A stretch of 63,243 nucleotides of DNA, the filler included, from Calcarisporiella thermophila CBS 279.70 (taxonomy: Eukaryota; Fungi; Calcarisporiellomycota), in NCBI RefSeq assembly GCF_041956535.1. It is 9 parts of 9 records of this genome, joined end to end, with 100 filler letters (N's around TTAATTAATTAA, not from the genome) between each part and the next. Parts side by side here need not be neighbours in the genome. Positions count along the whole stretch, not along the records: positions 15,914 to 21,472 come from NW_027192224.1; positions 21,573 to 42,983 come from NW_027192210.1; 7 more parts are not named here. One strand, 5' to 3'. The position numbers and the translations under genes are program-made. How positions within the stretch are numbered: position 1 is the stretch's first letter; every line of letters begins with the position of its first letter. The notes under the pieces were generated by a model that saw only the letters and a list, made by a program, of their open reading frames with translations, was not told where the DNA came from and made no database searches. Shown piece after piece: positions 14,518 to 21,591 of this stretch.

Positions 14518-16373
14518 AGTCAAATGATTTTGTTATGGAAGTTACCCTGTCTATTTAGCTGTACGGGATACTCTGCAAGAAAAATGTTTTAAAAATAAAC
14601 AGGTGTCAACCGATTGAAATCATTTACTAGTAAACTCATTTGTAGCTTTAAAATTGGTAAAATATATTACATTAGATTAGATAAATTGAAAGATACAATG
14701 GAACCAGCTTGTTTTGCACTTTGATAATATTCGACCTTAATTCGAGGTCTCACCAATTTGATATTAGAATTACTAAGCGCAAGGAGGCGGCGAGAGATTG
14801 AAATGTTCCGAGGTCGGAGGTGCATGCAGGATATAGCGATAGAAGGGTTGTTAAAGCTGTACTGGTATTGGAAGGATTAATAAAAGCTCCTTTTCAATTA
14901 TTATTCGTTTTTATTTATCCTTTTTTTTTTCGAGAGCTTAATGTCAATTAGTATCCTAGCATTATTTTATTAACTAACAATTACAAGATATTGGATAATA
15001 CACTCATTTACAATATACAGTATACTATTAATAATCAGCCACTAATAATCTAAATAATCTAAATAATCTAAATTTTTTTCCACCTATATAATTCATATGC
15101 TTTATTAGAGTCTTTTCAGCTTTAAATATTCTAATAAACTAAGTATGATAAAATAAAAAAGAGCTGACTATGTCATGATCTGGAGCATATAAAAGACCAG
15201 GATAGCAATCGTAAGAATGCCAACAAGTAATAAGCTGTTGGCTTCGAATACATATTTCCGCCCAACTTGATTCTCGCAATCAAAGGAAGACTAAAAGGAT
15301 TCTAGCCGAAATTGGGGATGTGTATGCGGATCTGGGCTCCTGTTACAATGAAATAGCCTTGAAACTTGAGGAGATACAGAGCGACTAATCCGATAAATAC
15401 AAGCTTTTTATTTTAATTTTTCCTCTAAGGTATTGTGTTTGTAGTATCATAACAACATATGAAACCAAATATTTCCAAAAAGTTGGCTGGTTTCATCACA
15501 GCTATGGACTCCACTTGGATGACAGCTAAGATCACTTATGAGTAGTTGCAGGCGGCCTCTTGACTATGCCATCTGGTCGGGGTACCTTAAAGATGCTTCT
15601 CTTGTTCTAGGCGGCTTTTTACATGAGGTCTACTCTGCCCAATTTGCTCCTCGTGGGTTCTAATATACAATGAACGTGAGTGTTATCCCCATGCTTCTAG
15701 ATACCGCCACCATAATTGTGCCAAATCTTCTCAGTCGAGAATTGATAGGCATGATCAAAGGTTGTAAAAATATGGCTAATTGAGCCCCCAAAAATCTAAT
15801 TTTGAATTAAGAANNNNNNNNNNNNNNNNNNNNNNNNNNNNNNNNNNNNNNNNNNNNTTAATTAATTAANNNNNNNNNNNNNNNNNNNNNNNNNNNNNNN
15901 NNNNNNNNNNNNNAATCCGAATAAGCGGAAGCGTGAACACTCCCATAGTAAAATCCATAAACTCTGCATTCTGTATGGAAACGCGAACACTTCTTTGGTA
16001 CGTACTCCCGTTTGGAGACAGTACATGCATCTATTCCGAAACTGAAAACGGTAAAATACGACCGCTGAGAGCAGATATCTCTCCTGGTGCTGGTATATGC
16101 TGTGGACTCTCACAAATCTATCTTCAGTGAGGAAGATAGTAATATCCCGATAATATTGTGTATGGGAGCCATATAAATCAATTAAAACTCCTCTTCCTAA
16201 GTCTTACTGAATTATCCAGTGAATAAACCCACCAAAGGTTTCTCTAACAGACTGCATTATACTCTTTTTATGAATTTGAAAATATGAGAAGAGTATTCGC
16301 GAAAGTTATATAGTACACAGATAAAAAATTAAGTTTACTAATAATGAAAAATAAAACTAATGGGTTATTGATA

Positions 16374-16618
16374 GTTTCATGACCAGTTAATTTTCATTTT
16401 GCTAGACTTGCGGGAGCTCTTTTTTTTTTGCTATTCAAGGCAACCCAACTGGTTGGCAGTGTCATTAATATGGGTTATATCTGTGCCAGAGTGTTTGACT
16501 CAATAAGGCAGAGTTCTCTGTTATTTTGGAAGTCAAAGAAGAGTCGGAAGTGGAGGTATTGGGGGAATGGGTTCAATACGTGATAAATTCGAAGTACTAT
16601 ATGCTCGCAGACTTCTAA
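16374..16618 (+). pseudogene. Paralogue 1 of unknown gene family (last exon only, frameshifted)
   Basis: FHDQLIFILLDLRELF / LLFKATQLVGSVINMGYICARV / VILEVKEESEVEVLGEWVQYVI aligns with the last exons at 19251-19476 and 20621-20853. Confidence 0.7.
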
Positions 16619-16721
16619 TTTAGTCTTTATTGAATATTTCAACAGCGTTCAGTTAATTCTATACATCTACTCTTTCATAGAGTTAAATTACTAATATATT
16701 CTAATCTAATTTCATATATGA

Positions 16722-17087
16722 TCAAATGCCAGGTATTAAAGGCATGTCCCCGCCACGAACAAATTGAGTGAAGTCCATAAAATCAGCATCTTGAACCGAT
16801 ACGCGAATACTTATTAAATGTGGGCTTCCGTTGGGAGAATGGCCGTTCATCCATGGTAACTCTCGTATAGTACGAAGTACCAACAACACGTGTAAAAGCA
16901 TGCACCCACTTTGATGTCGATAAACGCTTTGCTGGATTCGAACATATCCAGCTTCAGAGAGGATGGCAGAAATTTCGGTATAATACCTTGTGTGATTTCC
17001 GAAGAACTCTATCAAAGCCCTACGCCCTAAATCGTATTTAATAATCCAGTGACCTACTCTCAATTGACCTTCTCTAACAGCTTCCAT
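16722..17087 (-). CDS. VapD/Cas2-like endoribonuclease (121 aa, intronless)
   Basis: IIKYDL (beta1 with Asp19), YTEISAILSEAGYVRIQQSVY (VapD Y.DI...L...GF.R.QGS.Y), LPWM, ISIRV and MDFTQFVR (VapD DFT..IK) appear in the VapD order and spacing. A-rich context before the ATG. Confidence 0.8.
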   Translation of the reverse strand: MEAVREGQLRVGHWIIKYDLGRRALIEFFGNHTRYYTEISAILSEAGYVRIQQSVYRHQSGCMLLHVLLVLRTIRELPWMNGHSPNGSPHLISIRVSVQDADFMDFTQFVRGGDMPLIPGI

Positions 17088-17329
17088 TTTATTTTTTTAG
17101 TAAACTTGAAAAAAAAATTAAGAGTGAAATATTTGAGCGAGATAAATGCTACCTCTAGATCAGTTTGAGGACTGAATATAAAGTATCTCTGTAAAGTTTT
17201 GGGGCAACTCAATATTTTTTAATTTTGCCTATATATCTCTTTACAATCAACGCCGGTATAAAAAAACAATTAAATTTTATTTGAAAAATCCACTTACGCT
17301 ATTGTCATTGCATATACTGTACAAATGAA

Positions 17330-17665
17330 TATTCTTTGTTAGCTCTTTACAAGTGAAATATTGATAAATATCGTAAATTTCCTTTAATCTAGATATAGAG
17401 ATTTTACAAATTATGGTGCCAAATTTTACTCTTTTCTTTACAAGGACATTATGATGAATACTCAAAAATTTGTATAGATAAAATGCTCTCCAATTGTCAT
17501 TTAGTATATCCTCCCTTTACCTTTACAACGGTTTGGATCTGTTCTAGCATCCTGCTGATCAGCTTCATACAATCCTCCTCCCTGAGTGACTCCAACACAA
17601 TATTCACCTTGTACCACAGATCACTCTAGCTCACTATCTTCGGGAATCTGCATCTCAGATGTCTG
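17330..17665 (-). mobile_element. Tc1/mariner transposase C-terminal remnant
   Basis: Reverse-complement homologue of 31565-31890 (..ERIQTV.KAKGGYTK and downstream flank). Confidence 0.8.
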
Positions 17666-18019
17666 CGCTTGTTCGTTAGTTGTATATGGTGCCCATGCAG
17701 TTGTCCATTACGCTTCTTTCAGAACCACTCTCGCCTTTCATTCCCAAAGATGAGTATTTGACACTCGTGAGAAAAAATGACACTATCCAAACTTCTACGG
17801 TTCAATTACTGTATTTCTTTGCAAATGCCAGTTTACTAAGACGATGTTTTTCGATCGAAAGTGTTTTTTCCCCTTGGCCCTTGCTAACAAATAATTACGA
17901 TGGAGTGTTTCACGTACAATTGTCACAGAAATAACCTCCTTAGCTGTCACGCTTCAAAGTTCTTATGCCTTGAATGCGTTCTTACACTCTCCTGTTGCAG
18001 TGCTTCTACATAATCTATT

Positions 18020-18285
18020 TTCACTATGATTGGAATATTTGAGTGGCCAGCCCATTTTCTTTATTGAAAGATTCTTCATTCTGGAGTATTCTTTATCCTA
18101 AGACCACTTTGACGCCGGTAAACGTTTTGCCGGATTCGTTCGAATCCGGTTTCAGAAAGAATGCTTTGCGATCTTGTAATAGAAACGAGTGTAATTGCAA
18201 TAAGAATTATCACGGCTTTCCGCCCTAATTCATACTTTACAATCAAATGCCTTACTGTAGTAAGACCTTCACTAACAGCTTGCAC
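18020..18285 (-). pseudogene. Degenerate second copy of the VapD/Cas2-like gene
   Basis: VQAVSEGLTTVRHLIVKYELGRKA...ILSETGFERIRQNVYRRQSG aligns to 16722-17087. ATG>GTG, YDL>YEL, compensating frameshifts (NYTRFYYKI in the other frame) and an early stop. Upstream 18305-18348 matches 17108-17155. Confidence 0.8.
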
Positions 18286-18500
18286 TGTTTTTTGTCTGTG
18301 AATTAAAAAAAGCAAGAGCAAAATATTTGAGAGAGATAAATGCCACCTACCCTCTTAGTTGAATATATACTATTCGATTTTCGGGTAATCAACCAACTAG
18401 GTTAGGTTTGAGAAAATGAAAAAACTGATATATTTGTGAGGATGAGTCGACATTTCAAGTTTTCCAAAGCTTCTCCGGTAAACTGTATAAAGTGAACATA

Positions 18501-19476
18501 ATGTCGAATGAAGATACCTCTCTGACCATCAAGTATCTAACCGACCGTAAGTTATAGTGGTTTTAGTAGTTTATTTTCCTTATACCTCACTTACGCCTAT
18601 TTTTTATCATTTGCTATATTTTCATAAAAAAGAATTAAACAACTTGGTCAAGGAGAGCGAAGAAAATTCTCGCATGTACTACAAGTGCTTGACTACTAAT
18701 ATATACGGAAAAGAGTATCTTGATCCCGCTAAATGCGAAGCTAACAATTTCGATCCAATAAAGTAAGGAGATTAGCAATGCTATTCATAATATACTAACG
18801 TATTCTAAAATAGGGCATGTAATGAGGAAGATATGAGGTACAAACTACTTTCGGAATATTGCGACGGTATCCGAAATTTGGTTGGTTGGCGTGAAACGAT
18901 TAACATTATATTTTCAGTAATGTAAGAAAAGTTATCTTAAATGGCTGTTAAATGGGAAGAGAAGTCATTTTGTATTTTAGCCCGGAGAAATATAAGAAAA
19001 AGCAAACGGGGCGCTCATTAGAAATACTCCATATTCCGGATACAGCTCATATGCGCGTTGAAAAGCGATCGAGAAATGTGAGAGATTTGGAATTGATTTT
19101 GAATGCTGTATGTGCTTGCTCTGAAACGCAATTTCATACAGAAAATACTTTCCTCGGTCTCCAAGGCTGCCCAGCGTATTATTCCAAGAAAGAACCAAAA
19201 GCACACTGGAAAGCAACCGAGTAGCGTAATGCATTGAAAACTGATTTTAGGTGTCATGAAGTACTGAATTACTCTTTAATACGCTTGCAGGAGTCTCTGT
19301 TTAGTAAGGCTTATCAACTCATCGGCCATGAGGTTACCATCGGCGATAGCTATGCAAAGGTGATTGCCGTCAAAGCGACAGAGGATTCTGTCACTTTGGA
19401 GGTTAAAGAGGAGGTGGAAGAAGGCATCTGGGACCAATATGAGATTGAATATGATACTATTATGAAACCACGCTGA
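18501..19476 (+). CDS. Paralogue 2: apparently intact 5-exon gene of unknown function (about 235-250 aa) with a C-terminal small beta-rich domain
   Basis: Phase-compatible exons 18501-18546, 18633-18762, 18814-18921, 18981 to about 19175 (or 19220) and 19251-19476. GTAAG donors for introns 1-3 and a TACTAAC branch site in intron 2. Ends LIGHEVTIGDSYAKVIAVKATEDSVTLEVKEEVEEGIWDQYEIEYDTIMKPR. Confidence 0.65.
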
Positions 19477-20124
19477 ACCGCCTATGAGCAAGCTCAGGTT
19501 ACCCATTGGTATATACAGCGAATACAATACTTGCTAACGCAATGCTAAGCGAGAAAACAAATGCATCCGCCTTCTCTATATATACAGAGAGCATGGGTGA
19601 ATCACACTAGGAAATTTTTTTTTTTCTAAATTTGTGATCATACGAGTTCGGATTCTATGTCAATTGAGTTTTATTTTGCTACTTAGTTTAAGGCGACTTG
19701 TATTTTTGCGCAATGCATTCCCTGTGTTTCTGAAATAATCAAAGTTGAATGGCTCGTCTTTCTTTAGGTTGAGTCCTCTCGAAGGCCTGATATAATGGTT
19801 AGTGGATAAAAAGCTAAATGCCGTGCTAAACGGCCATTTTCTTTGTCGATCAGCGAGAATGTTATCATAGTGGAATATCCCTTACTATTACAAGGAGTTA
19901 ATGCCACAATGCGGGTCGACAGTAAGCTCGAGCTAGAAAAGAGTGAAGGATGACGCGGAGTTTTTTTAAGAGTTAAAATTCAATAAAAGTCTCTGCTCTA
20001 GGCAAAATGGAACCGCGTTTCAAACCCTGGCGATACCTATGTCAAGGTGATTACTGCCGAGATGTCAGAGAAATCGTTAGGAGAGTAAAAAATCGGCTCG
20101 AGTATATTATGAGTGCATGTGCAC

Positions 20125-20853
20125 TGACAAATATGGGCAAACGTATCTCGATCGGGAAAATGGCTAGGCTAACAAATTCGATCCGATAAACGTAAGGTGG
20201 CTAATGTTTTTTTTTTGATCAAAAGTGAGTTTTTATTGTTTAAGAAGACTCTAAAGTGCAATTGTTACATTATTAAAAGTAATAAAATGAGAGAAAAGCT
20301 AGATTTTAACGCGGCATTGCAATTCGGGGTAAGTTGATCATAACAAATTTTCTCCTCAAATGGGTAGATGAGTAATAAAACTCATCTAACTTTGGGTATT
20401 AGGGGACGACTTGATAAATAAGGTGGCTGATGGTGTGTGATGCGTACGACTATATGCTGATGTATTTCATAGTAGATTCACTAGCGATCAAGTAATGAGG
20501 ATCAAAATTGCTATTAGGTATTGCGGCGATATTAGTGATATGCTTGATTGACGCGAAGATAATCAAGTGATTCCGTCTAATATGTAGTCAAGAAGCATGA
20601 CACATCTAAACTCGATTTTAGATGCTATAATCAGTTGAGTTTTATATGGTTACTCTTACAGGATCTCTTTATTTTGCTCTGGAAGGCAACTCGACTTGTT
20701 GACAGTGAGATCGGCATTAGTGATACCTATGCAAAGGTGATTGCTGTTAAAATGACAGATTTAGTTGATGTTTTGGAAGTCAAAGAAGAGGTAGAGGAGG
20801 GCATATGGGACAAATATGTAATCGATTGCAATTCTAATATGAAGCCGCGCTGA
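20125..20853 (+). pseudogene. Paralogue 3 of unknown gene family, disrupted
   Basis: Remnants YLDRENG*ANKFDPIN (exon 2), YCGDISDMLD*RED (exon 3) and last exon ...TYAKVIAVKMTDLVDVLEVKEEVEEGIWDKYVIDCNSNMKPR. Internal stops and a LINE tail in an intron. Confidence 0.75.
20207..20418 (-). mobile_element. 5'-truncated LINE 3' UTR insertion
   Basis: Poly-T at 20207-20216, similarity to 13495-13690, and a 14-bp TSD TAAGGTGGCT(A/G)ATG at 20193-20206 and 20419-20432. Confidence 0.85.
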
Positions 20854-21312
20854 GCTTCTTTGAGCAAGTTCAGTTTTTCATCATATTTGTAAACAGCGAA
20901 TGCAATACTTGCAATCAATAGGCTAAAAAGGAAAATAAACCCATCGGTACTTTCTATCGCATACATCGAGCATGTATAAATAACACTTGGGAATTATCTA
21001 GATTCGTTATCATGTTGACCCAGGATGGATTGTTGAATATTTTGGCCTAAATATCCCAGTGATGTGCCATTGTTTAATAAAGAGATAGGGGAAACTGTGA
21101 GTAATATAGCTAATAGTCACTAGCAATTTATCAAATATTAAGCTAGATATGTGTTGTTATGCATTAAATCAGCTATGTTTTATTATGTGCACTTTATTTG
21201 CCAATTTAGCTGCAGTAAAATATTTCATGAAGCCACATCAGTTAGAATTAAGAATTTGAAGTAGGTTGGTATTATGATCCAAATGAAGTACAGCCGACGT
21301 ATTCTATAATAG

Positions 21313-21419
21313 AGCTTGTAATGACCAAGTTACGAGGATGAAGCTAATAGCCAAGTATTGCAGCGATATTAATAGGATGAATGATTGGCGTGAAGCAGAC
21401 AGATTGATGTTATCACTTA
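21313..21419 (+). CDS. Paralogue 4 of unknown gene family (exon-3 homologue; remainder lost in gap)
   Basis: AG-flanked exon ACNDQVTRMKLIAKYCSDINRMNDWREADRLMLSL, with near-identical length and the same phase-2 boundaries as ACNEEDMRYKLLSEYCDGIRNLVGWRETINIIFSV of paralogue 2. Confidence 0.7.
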
Positions 21420-21591
21420 TGTAGGTAGGCAATATCTCATATATTATTGATATATGGAGGGTGGAGTGCCCCNNNNNNNNNNNNNNNNNNNNNNNNNNNN
21501 NNNNNNNNNNNNNNNNTTAATTAATTAANNNNNNNNNNNNNNNNNNNNNNNNNNNNNNNNNNNNNNNNNNNNTAAGAATTATTCAATTGTC

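What the first reader, a model, noticed from the sequence alone, without database searches (positions are those of the whole stretch)
16374..21472. Candidate fungal toxin-antidote/defence cluster: two VapD-like copies interleaved with four paralogues of an unknown gene
Seen on one contig: [paralogue 1 remnant +][VapD -][Tc1 remnant][VapD pseudogene -][paralogue 2 +, divergently oriented, only about 215 bp from the VapD pseudogene start][paralogue 3 pseudogene +][paralogue 4 +]. Each family seems to keep one intact copy here, apart from paralogue 4, which is cut by the gap. Established: bacterial VapD is neutralised by a small beta-rich antitoxin (VapX). Fungal killer, meiotic-drive and incompatibility loci are fast-evolving, duplicated and TE-rich. 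Inference: the partner gene could be an antidote or regulator, giving a two-component system under birth-and-death evolution. The link rests only on clustering and co-duplication.
Basis: inference. Interest (0 to 1): 0.85.

Follow-up and report, generated by a model that had tools for sequence, protein, structure and literature searches.

The report
Fungal VapD-like nuclease and partner pair
At the end of a Calcarisporiella thermophila contig lies a decaying tandem array of a bacterial-type VapD-like nuclease gene and an unknown partner gene, and the same head-to-head pair also occurs in arbuscular mycorrhizal fungi, so it is a conserved two-gene module and a candidate toxin-antidote system in a eukaryote.

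Summary
The piece is the last 5.5 kb of contig MU987597.1 of Calcarisporiella thermophila. It holds three minus-strand VapD-like copies: one intact 121-aa ORF that NCBI did not annotate, and two pseudogenes. It also holds four to five plus-strand copies or fragments of an intron-bearing partner gene, one of them intact (annotated, 216 aa).

The VapD assignment is real but divergent. Solved VapD structures are the best sequence and fold matches, and the catalytic Asp and Ser are invariant. The curated HMM cut-offs are not reached.

In Rhizophagus clarus, Funneliformis caledonium, F. mosseae and one metagenome contig, the gene just upstream of the VapD-like gene, and divergent from it, is a homologue of the partner. 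The pair is therefore conserved across two fungal phyla.

The partner's C-terminal domain folds confidently as an SH3-like small beta-barrel. That is the fold class of the bacterial VapD antitoxins VapX and VapY, but the match is generic.

Paralogues diverged under purifying selection (dN/dS 0.1-0.3) before they decayed. Toxicity, binding and expression are untested. A toxin-antidote or defence role is an inference, at about 40-45%.

The parts
15914..16257 (-). VapD-like copy A, a pseudogene. The Tyr codon just before the catalytic Asp is a stop, there is a frameshift in the middle, and its 3' end is cut by the assembly gap.
   Evidence: (tblastn E 1e-17)
16384..16590 (+). Partner remnant P1: last exon only, with one frameshift.
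   Evidence: (D1, D10). The same arrangement is duplicated on contig MU987670.1 (L001).
16722..17087 (-). VapD-like copy B: intact single-exon ORF of 121 aa. Catalytic Asp19 and Ser54 are present. NCBI did not annotate it.
   Evidence: NCBIfam VapD E 1e-5; PDB 6ZI0/6ZN8 E 9e-4
17088..17260 (-). Upstream block shared by B-type VapD-like copies. Its proximal 75 nt or so are also shared with copy C.
   Evidence: (D7, 86%)
17500..17953 (-). Decayed, internally deleted Tc1/mariner-like stretch. It replaces the 3' half of copy C and whatever lay upstream of copy B.
   Evidence: motifs read by eye: a VIFSHE...F segment and a C-terminal ...KGGYTK stop. Pfam is blank, so the support is weak.
18103..18285 (-). 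VapD-like copy C, a pseudogene. It has a GTG in place of ATG, the catalytic Asp is changed to Glu, and it is truncated after about residue 61.
   Evidence: (E 5e-13)
18286..18500 (.). Spacer of 215 nt between the divergent starts of copy C and partner P2. Inferred to be a bidirectional promoter.
   Evidence: The spacing matches the head-to-head pairs in other fungi (about 190-900 nt).
18501..19476 (+). Partner P2, the intact copy, annotated as a 216-aa product with 5 exons. Exon 1 is 18501-18546, exon 2 is 18633-18762 and exon 3 starts at 18814. A middle exon lies within 18981-19220. The last exon ends at 19476 and encodes the SH3-like domain (19291-19473).
   Evidence: annotated gene; splice combinations that give 216 aa
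19660..19705 (+). Possible further short remnant of the intron/last-exon junction of a partner copy.
   Evidence: D8 and D10, 81-83% over 21-24 nt. Weak.
20029..20853 (+). Partner P3, a pseudogene. It carries a last-exon fragment fused upstream, in-frame stops in the exon 2-like (20081-20188) and exon 3-like (20483-20572) parts, no middle exon, and an open last exon (20662-20853). NCBI models a 77-aa product from 20287-20853 (P0002).
21297..21472 (+). Partner P4 fragment. An exon 3-like part (21314-21397) is open. No exon 2 was detected upstream, and the copy is cut by the end of the contig.

Best explanation
The locus is a tandem, mostly decayed array of a conserved fungal two-gene module.

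Gene 1 is a single-exon gene of about 120 aa from the VapD branch of the Cas2 superfamily. It has a ferredoxin-like fold, and the Asp and Ser that bacterial VapD nucleases need are kept.

Gene 2 is transcribed divergently from a short shared spacer. It has introns and encodes a protein of about 170-240 aa. Its N-terminal part carries an invariant motif (Y..C.T..YG...LDP.K..A..FD), and its C-terminal part is an SH3-like small beta-barrel.

Shown here:
- The homology and fold of both parts.
- Conservation of the head-to-head pair in Calcarisporiella, Rhizophagus, Funneliformis and an unnamed metagenome fungus, with different flanking genes.
- Repeated duplication followed by decay, with purifying selection acting between paralogues.

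Inferred:
- The VapD-like protein is a nuclease that harms the cell when free.
- The partner binds and restrains it, as the SH3-fold antitoxins VapX and VapY do in bacteria.
- The pair therefore behaves as a selfish addiction, incompatibility or defence module, which would explain its patchy spread, its copy-number turnover and its place in a repeat-rich contig end.

My odds: about 0.8 that this is a conserved, functionally coupled pair, and about 0.4-0.45 that the coupling is toxin-antidote.
For: VapD identity:
- NCBIfam VapD model, E 1e-5.
- phmmer to H. influenzae VapD 6ZI0/6ZN8, E 9e-4.
- A family profile hits four solved VapD proteins, best 9KAN at E 2.7e-5, and Cas2 only weakly.
- The AlphaFold model has pLDDT 89. 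Its eight best Foldseek matches in the PDB are all VapD chains, E 8e-5 to 4e-3.
- Asp19 and Ser54 are invariant in 9 full-length members. They align to the residues called catalytic in PMC11980593.

Pairing:
- tblastn of C. thermophila partner exon 2 against the gene divergent from the VapD-like gene gives E 1e-15 (R. clarus), 1e-8 (F. caledonium), 3e-8 (F. mosseae) and 8e-13 (L013).
- For the last exon of the C. thermophila partner, E is 3e-8 (R. clarus), 5e-8 (F. caledonium) and 1e-6 (F. mosseae). On L013, whose contig end cuts that exon, only the Funneliformis last exons match (F. caledonium 4e-7, F. mosseae 3e-4).
- The orientation is the same as C/P2 in the window, and the flanking genes differ.

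Partner fold:
- pLDDT 90.7 from a six-sequence alignment.
- All the top structural matches are SH3-like barrels, and VapX 6ZN8_F scores Z 5.0 over 55 of 62 residues.

Selection:
- dN/dS is 0.08-0.33 between VapD-like paralogues and 0.22-0.28 between partner last exons.

Turnover:
- 1 intact copy among 5 VapD-like copies on this contig, plus 2 broken copies on L001.
- Broken copies also occur in Glomeromycota.
Against: - There is no evidence of toxicity, nuclease activity, binding or expression.
- The curated thresholds of the VapD and Cas2 models are not reached (25.9 against 100 bits; 14.9 against 23.8 bits).
- The SH3-like fold is among the commonest small folds, and VapX is only one of about 47 matches at Z 5 or more.
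- The partner is two to three times longer than VapX or VapY. Its best-conserved part is the N-terminal motif, not the barrel.
- The genes are divergent, not an operon.
- The intact VapD-like copy B no longer has a partner at its own head. The intact partner P2 sits head-to-head with a dead copy.
- Three VapD-like loci (L005, L008-L012, L014) have no detectable partner beside them.
- In R. clarus and both Funneliformis loci the VapD-like gene is itself broken.
Confidence: 0.45

Rival explanations
1. The two proteins are functionally coupled, but not as toxin and antidote. They would work together, for example as a VapD/Cas2-like nuclease with an SH3/Tudor/KOW/Sm-like adaptor that brings it to RNA, DNA or a protein target. 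The role could be RNA processing, or defence against mycoviruses, transposons or endobacteria, with both parts needed for activity.
For: - The head-to-head pairing is conserved, which suggests co-regulation from one spacer.
- The nearest fold matches of the partner barrel are domains that bind nucleic acid or protein: NusG/Spt5 KOW, Tudor, Hfq/Sm and EF-P.
- The partner is much larger than bacterial antitoxins and has a strongly conserved N-terminal motif of unknown role.
- Cas2 itself works as a structural partner rather than as a toxin (PMC11980593).
Against: - A cooperative housekeeping function fits poorly with the patchy distribution, the many pseudogenes and the copy-number turnover.
- The kept catalytic Asp and Ser fit a free-standing nuclease.
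- A defence version of this rival is hard to tell from the main explanation without experiments.
Confidence: 0.3
2. There is no functional link. Two unrelated neighbours were copied together by segmental duplication, and the whole array in C. thermophila is a decaying relic with no present function.
For: - Most copies here are broken.
- The only intact VapD-like ORF was not called as a gene and has lost its own head-to-head partner.
- L001 shows that whole blocks are copied as units.
- The 'middle exon' of the partner evolves neutrally, with dN/dS of about 1.
- Expression is unknown.
Against: - The adjacency and orientation recur in four other loci from at least three further lineages in another phylum, with unrelated flanks. 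Microsynteny by inertia is not expected over that distance.
- dN/dS of 0.1-0.3 between paralogues shows that selection acted after duplication.
- L013 carries an intact VapD-like ORF next to open partner exons.
- Intact 120-121-aa members exist in R. irregularis.
Confidence: 0.12
3. The pair is cargo of a mobile element or a virus-derived insert. Its spread and copy number would then reflect transposition or transfer between Glomeromycota and Calcarisporiella, not selection on the host.
For: - The distribution is patchy. Only about 15 representative relatives exist among 1.8 billion proteins, all from Glomeromycota, Calcarisporiella or unnamed metagenomes.
- Flanking genes differ at every locus.
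- The array lies next to a transposon-like remnant in a region rich in gaps and repeats.
- The VapD-like gene has no introns.
Against: - No terminal repeats, transposase or integrase were found in a consistent position beside the pair. The Tc1-like stretch interrupts the array rather than framing it.
- The partner gene has several spliceosomal introns with fungal signals.
- Copies within C. thermophila differ by dS 0.4 to over 1, so amplification is old, not a recent burst.
- This rival was not tested systematically.
Confidence: 0.13

Closest known systems
Bacterial VapXD and VapYD type II toxin-antitoxin systems (H. influenzae VapD-VapX, PDB 6ZN8; Muribaculum VapD-VapY, PMC11980593)
   Same: - The toxin-side protein has the VapD fold and keeps the catalytic Asp and Ser.
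- A neighbouring gene is conserved with it.
- The C-terminal domain of that neighbour is an SH3-like five-strand barrel, the fold class of VapX and VapY (PMC11980593).
- Bacterial vapD loci are also prone to local duplication (PMC11980593).
   Different: - The host is a eukaryote.
- The genes are divergent with separate transcripts, not an operon.
- The partner has introns, is 170-240 aa rather than the small single-domain VapX (62 residues in chain 6ZN8_F), and has a conserved N-terminal region with no known relative.
- The partner has no detectable sequence similarity to VapX.
- Identity to bacterial VapD is only 14-23% over the Foldseek structural alignments, and the curated HMM cut-offs are not reached.
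- Toxicity and neutralisation are untested.
Cas2 (CRISPR adaptation protein), Pfam PF09827
   Same: Same superfamily and ferredoxin-like fold. There are weak HMM hits: Pfam E 0.03 for copy B and 1e-4 for P0003, and PADLOC Cas2 E 5e-6 to 6e-4.
   Different: VapD structures match better than Cas2 by both sequence and fold. No Cas1 gene and no CRISPR array are seen in the 5.5-kb piece. Nothing suggests an adaptation role.
Fungal toxin-antidote and incompatibility loci (wtf, Spok, het genes)
   Same: The genomic behaviour is similar: a fast-turnover, duplicated, pseudogene-rich, transposon-associated cluster, with a plausible killer and protector logic.
   Different: I recall no homology to any of these, and did not test it. 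wtf and Spok are single genes that encode both activities. No data on drive, segregation or allorecognition exist for this pair. This comparison rests on my general knowledge, not on a test here.

Membership tests
VapD (Cas2 superfamily) nuclease | Ferredoxin-like VapD fold, with solved VapD structures as the best structural matches | tested here: met
   The model has pLDDT 89 and pTM 0.84. Foldseek PDB ranks 1-8 are all VapD chains (6ZI1, 6ZN8, 3UI3, 9KAN, 6ZI0), with E 8e-5 to 4e-3 and target TM up to 0.75. Cas2 ranks lower.
VapD (Cas2 superfamily) nuclease | Score above the curated cut-off of the family HMM | tested here: not met
   NCBIfam NF041506 VapD scores 25.9 bits against a cut-off of 100. 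Pfam PF09827 scores 14.9 bits against 23.8 for copy B and 22.9 for P0003. This is a divergent branch, not a canonical member.
VapD (Cas2 superfamily) nuclease | Conserved catalytic Asp at the end of beta-1, and conserved Ser | tested here: met
   Asp19 and Ser54 are invariant in 9 full-length fungal and metagenome members. They align to the Asp and Ser of solved VapD proteins. These residues are named as catalytic in PMC11980593.
VapD (Cas2 superfamily) nuclease | Nuclease activity, and toxicity on over-expression | not testable with these tools
   Needs an experiment.
Type II toxin-antitoxin pair of the VapXD/VapYD kind | The toxin gene is consistently next to one particular partner gene across taxa | tested here: met
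   The partner homologue lies just upstream and divergent in C. thermophila, R. clarus, F. caledonium, F. mosseae and metagenome contig L013. It is absent beside three other loci, where the VapD-like gene is mostly decayed. The genes are divergent, not co-oriented as in an operon.
Type II toxin-antitoxin pair of the VapXD/VapYD kind | The partner is a small SH3-fold beta-barrel protein | tested here: inconclusive
   The C-terminal 61 aa fold as an SH3-like barrel with pLDDT 90.7. VapX 6ZN8_F scores Z 5.0, rmsd 2.6 over 55 residues, but it ranks 41st among many generic barrels, the best at Z 6.9. The whole partner is 170-240 aa with additional conserved parts.
Type II toxin-antitoxin pair of the VapXD/VapYD kind | The partner binds the toxin directly and neutralises it | tested here: inconclusive
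   One complex prediction (two VapD-like chains plus the partner barrel) returned 'no answer' with a score of 0.02.
Tc1/mariner transposon (the stretch at 17500-17953) | A recognisable transposase domain | tested here: not met
   Pfam finds nothing on any ORF or stop-free fragment. Only short motifs were read by eye.

The most novel reading that the evidence does not exclude
A chromosomal toxin-antitoxin-like module of bacterial VapD ancestry has been rebuilt in eukaryotic form. It would consist of an intronless nuclease gene and an intron-bearing partner gene on a shared bidirectional spacer. It would persist and turn over as a selfish or defence element in coenocytic early-diverging fungi (Glomeromycota and Calcarisporiella). 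There it could act between nuclei, between fusing hyphae, or against viruses and endobacteria.
Probability: 0.35. Interest if true: 0.85.

Novelty: new variant of a known kind. Interest (0 to 1): 0.72.

Why it matters
Type II toxin-antitoxin modules are treated as a prokaryotic invention, and the VapD branch of the Cas2 superfamily is described from bacteria. Here a VapD-like gene with intact catalytic residues is conserved, together with a specific neighbour, in two fungal phyla, one of which is the arbuscular mycorrhizal fungi. If the pair acts as nuclease and inhibitor, it would be a eukaryotic counterpart of a bacterial addiction or defence module, in organisms where many nuclei share one cytoplasm and where conflict between nuclei is an open question. 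The test is simple: express one protein, express both, and mutate Asp19. I found no paper on fungal VapD in the searchable library. The intact copy in this genome is not even annotated, so the family is easy to miss.

Tried and rejected
I did not try read laying, so expression is unknown.
- Complex prediction of two VapD-like chains with the partner C-terminal domain: 'no answer', score 0.02. This is no evidence either way.
- Partner against Pfam, NCBIfam, PADLOC, PDB sequences and the ESM Atlas by features: nothing.
- Atlas by shape: only generic SH3/Tudor/FlgD/L19-like barrels.
- I searched exons one by one, by reference. One search listed only splice-site coordinates consistent with the annotated 216 aa.
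- For the same reason, and because of the length window of the search for homologous proteins, I could not retrieve the annotated 168-241-aa partner proteins. I therefore could not ask whether the partner occurs without VapD.
- Pfam support for the Tc1 remnant: none.
- Bacterial contamination: rejected. The partner has GT-AG introns with TACTAAC-type branch sites, and the family sits on fungal contigs of 0.24-2.2 Mb beside fungal genes.

Full report
**Where the piece comes from.** The stretch 15914-21472 is identical to the last 5,559 bases of contig MU987597.1 (241,882 bp) of Calcarisporiella thermophila assembly GCA_041956535.1. C. thermophila belongs to the phylum Calcarisporiellomycota. 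On the left the piece abuts an assembly gap of about 2.9 kb. On the right it ends with the contig. GC content is 31-41%.

The minus strand carries three copies of a gene of about 121 aa:
- Copy A, 15914-16257: a stop at the codon before the catalytic Asp, a frameshift, and a cut at the gap.
- Copy B, 16722-17087: intact.
- Copy C, 18103-18285: a GTG start, the Asp changed to Glu, and truncation after about residue 61.

The plus strand carries copies of a second gene:
- P1, 16384-16590: a frameshifted last exon only.
- P2, 18501-19476: intact, annotated by NCBI as 216 aa.
- P3, 20029-20853: stops in two exons and no middle exon. NCBI models a 77-aa product, P0002.
- P4, 21297-21472: an open exon 3-like part, cut by the contig end.
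- A possible scrap at 19660-19705.

Between copies B and C lies a decayed stretch that looks Tc1-like by eye. Pfam does not recognise any of its fragments.

The array continues beyond the gap. L002 holds another partner copy, 77% identical to P2 over 687 nt, and two more VapD-like copies in an inverted arrangement. A separate 2.1-kb contig (L001) repeats the block A - P1 remnant - B.

**Is it VapD?**
- Copy B matches the NCBIfam VapD model at E 1e-5, but at 25.9 bits against a cut-off of 100. It matches Pfam Cas2 only weakly.
- It matches H. influenzae VapD (6ZI0, 6ZN8) at E 9e-4.
- A profile of 11 family members hits C. jejuni VapD (9KAN, E 2.7e-5), then the VapD proteins of H. pylori, H. influenzae and a fourth solved entry (5DYR), then Cas2 weakly.
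- The AlphaFold model built on that alignment has pLDDT 89. Its eight best Foldseek matches in the PDB are all VapD chains.
- In nine full-length members Asp19 and Ser54 are invariant. They align with the Asp and Ser that PMC11980593 describes as the catalytic residues of VapD.

So this is a divergent branch of VapD, with the fold and active-site residues kept. It does not pass the curated family thresholds.

**Distribution of the VapD-like family.** An exhaustive HMMER search of 1.84 billion representative proteins finds only 15 relatives at E up to 1e-3. The named ones come from Rhizophagus clarus, R. irregularis, Funneliformis mosseae, F. caledonium and C. thermophila. The rest are unnamed metagenome or SRA proteins, some called VapD or Cas2 by IMG. 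No bacterial VapD reached that threshold, so this is not a recent transfer or contamination. Intact copies of 120-121 aa exist (P0003, P0018). Many genomic copies are broken. Copy B itself is not in the NCBI gene set.

**The key test: is the partner linked elsewhere?** I fetched the loci around the VapD-like genes of other fungi and searched them with the C. thermophila partner exons. In four distinct loci the gene directly upstream of the VapD-like gene, on the opposite strand, is a homologue of the partner.

| Locus | Source | Exon 2 E-value | Last exon E-value |
|---|---|---|---|
| L003/L004 | R. clarus, two assemblies | 1e-15 | 3e-8 |
| L006 | F. caledonium | 1e-8 | 5e-8 |
| L007 | F. mosseae | 3e-8 | 1e-6 |
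| L013 | metagenome contig, intact 121-aa VapD-like gene | 8e-13 | no hit with the C. thermophila exon |

On L013 the match to F. caledonium exon 2 is 70% identical (E 8e-19). Its last exon, which the contig end cuts, is matched only by the Funneliformis last exons (F. caledonium E 4e-7, F. mosseae E 3e-4).

Orientation and spacing match C/P2 in the window. The annotated gap is 263 nt in R. clarus, about 750-820 nt in the two Funneliformis loci, and about 190-240 nt on L013 by my estimate from the tblastn coordinates. The flanking genes differ: a protein kinase in R. clarus, and two giant GTPase/VWA genes in F. caledonium.

Three other loci show no partner. These are R. irregularis L005, the metagenome element L008-L012 with a disrupted VapD-like gene, and L014. 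The pair is a conserved module across two phyla, though not an obligatory one.

**What the partner is.**
- No family library recognises any exon.
- Exon 2 carries a strongly conserved motif, with 12 invariant positions in five lineages.
- Exon 3 is conserved more weakly. This is my reading of the translations and of tblastn hits between Funneliformis and L013.
- The 'middle exon' is shared only by the C. thermophila copies P2 and P0. It evolves at dN/dS of about 1, so it may be a linker or not coding at all.
- The last exon, aligned from six copies in four species, folds with pLDDT 90.7 into a short helix and a beta-meander.
- Foldseek, VIA-align and the Atlas all return SH3-like small barrels: EF-P/eIF5A, NusG/Spt5 KOW, Tudor, Sm/Hfq, FlgD and L19. 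The best Z is 6.9. VapX from the VapXD complex (6ZN8_F) scores Z 5.0, rmsd 2.6 A over 55 of 62 residues, at rank 41.

The known VapD antitoxins VapX and VapY both have the SH3 fold (PMC11980593). The resemblance is therefore suggestive, but the fold is too common to count as identification.

All searches were exon by exon, by reference.

**Evolutionary mode.** Between C. thermophila paralogues, dN/dS is 0.08-0.33 for the VapD-like gene and 0.22-0.28 for the partner's last exon, with dS from 0.4 to saturation. The duplicates are therefore old and were under purifying selection for most of their divergence. The stops, frameshifts, truncations and active-site change now seen came later. This is birth-and-death evolution. 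On this contig only one copy of each family is intact, and they are not each other's head-to-head neighbours. Copy B has lost the partner at its head to the Tc1-like stretch, and P2 faces the dead copy C.

**Mechanism, with odds.**
- Shown: a VapD-fold protein with catalytic residues, a specific conserved divergent neighbour with an SH3-like C-terminal barrel, and high turnover.
- Inferred, about 0.4-0.45: the VapD-like protein is a harmful nuclease and the partner restrains it by binding, as in VapXD and VapYD. The short spacer would act as a bidirectional promoter that keeps the two in balance. The pair would behave as an addiction, incompatibility or defence element.
- Main rival, about 0.3: the two act together, with the barrel as an adaptor that binds nucleic acid or protein.
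- Lesser rivals: no functional link, or a relic (0.12), and cargo of a mobile element (0.13).

The one complex prediction gave no verdict and counts for nothing. Expression could not be examined.

**Novelty.** Full-text searches found no paper that links VapD to Rhizophagus or to fungi in this sense. The 2025 census of VapD partners (PMC11980593) started from 617 UniProt sequences classed as VapD, and every system it characterises is bacterial. I rate this a new variant of a known kind: VapD with a conserved partner, but in eukaryotes, with divergent gene order and a new, larger, intron-bearing partner.

Noticed in passing
window 16722-17087 (-): The only intact VapD-like ORF on this contig is not in the NCBI gene set for the assembly. 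No gene is called between L002 630 and 8215. Absence of the family from annotated fungal proteomes therefore says little about its absence from their genomes.
   Followed up: partly
L002 1541-2042 (upstream of the gap, outside the piece): Two VapD-like copies face each other as a near-perfect inverted duplication (dS 0.03, centre near 1880-1900). Both are truncated at the junction. This is either a recent palindromic rearrangement or an assembly artefact.
   Followed up: partly
L006 1-5531 and 13946-20318 (F. caledonium): Here the VapD-like/partner pair sits between two same-strand giant genes (2,372 and 2,325 aa) with URGCP-type GTPase and VWA domains. These may be tandem duplicates. Whether large NTPase genes recur next to the pair was not checked.
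   Followed up: no
window 18981-19220 and L002 151-375: The partner's 'middle exon' is shared only by P2 and the upstream copy P0, and is missing from P3 and from the Glomeromycota genes. It evolves at dN/dS of about 0.96 with low dS (0.28). The last exon of the same two copies is saturated at synonymous sites. The unequal divergence along one gene pair is unexplained. Gene conversion, or a stretch that is not coding, are possible causes.
   Followed up: partly
window 17088-17260; L001 1080-1258; L002 2043-2220: A block of about 170 nt upstream of B-type VapD-like copies is conserved among paralogues. Its proximal 75 nt or so are also conserved upstream of copy C, including a motif of the form CATTTATCTC.CTCAAATATTT. 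It could be a promoter or a 5' UTR element.
   Followed up: partly
L008-L012 (JGI metagenomes 3300050046-3300050168): The same decayed VapD-like gene (P0013, with an insert of about 180 nt) appears on contigs from six metagenome samples. No partner is detectable within about 1 kb upstream. The source organism is unknown.
   Followed up: partly
P0015: A 2,137-aa protein matches residues 33-66 of the VapD-like query in ten separate stretches (E 9e-5). It may be a repeat protein built from part of this fold, or a low-complexity artefact.
   Followed up: no
L001 1259-1621: NCBI protein VTP21DRAFT_1498 (P0001, 79 aa) is a gene model that splices around a frameshift and stop in a broken VapD-like copy. 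The annotated 'intron' is probably not real.
   Followed up: partly
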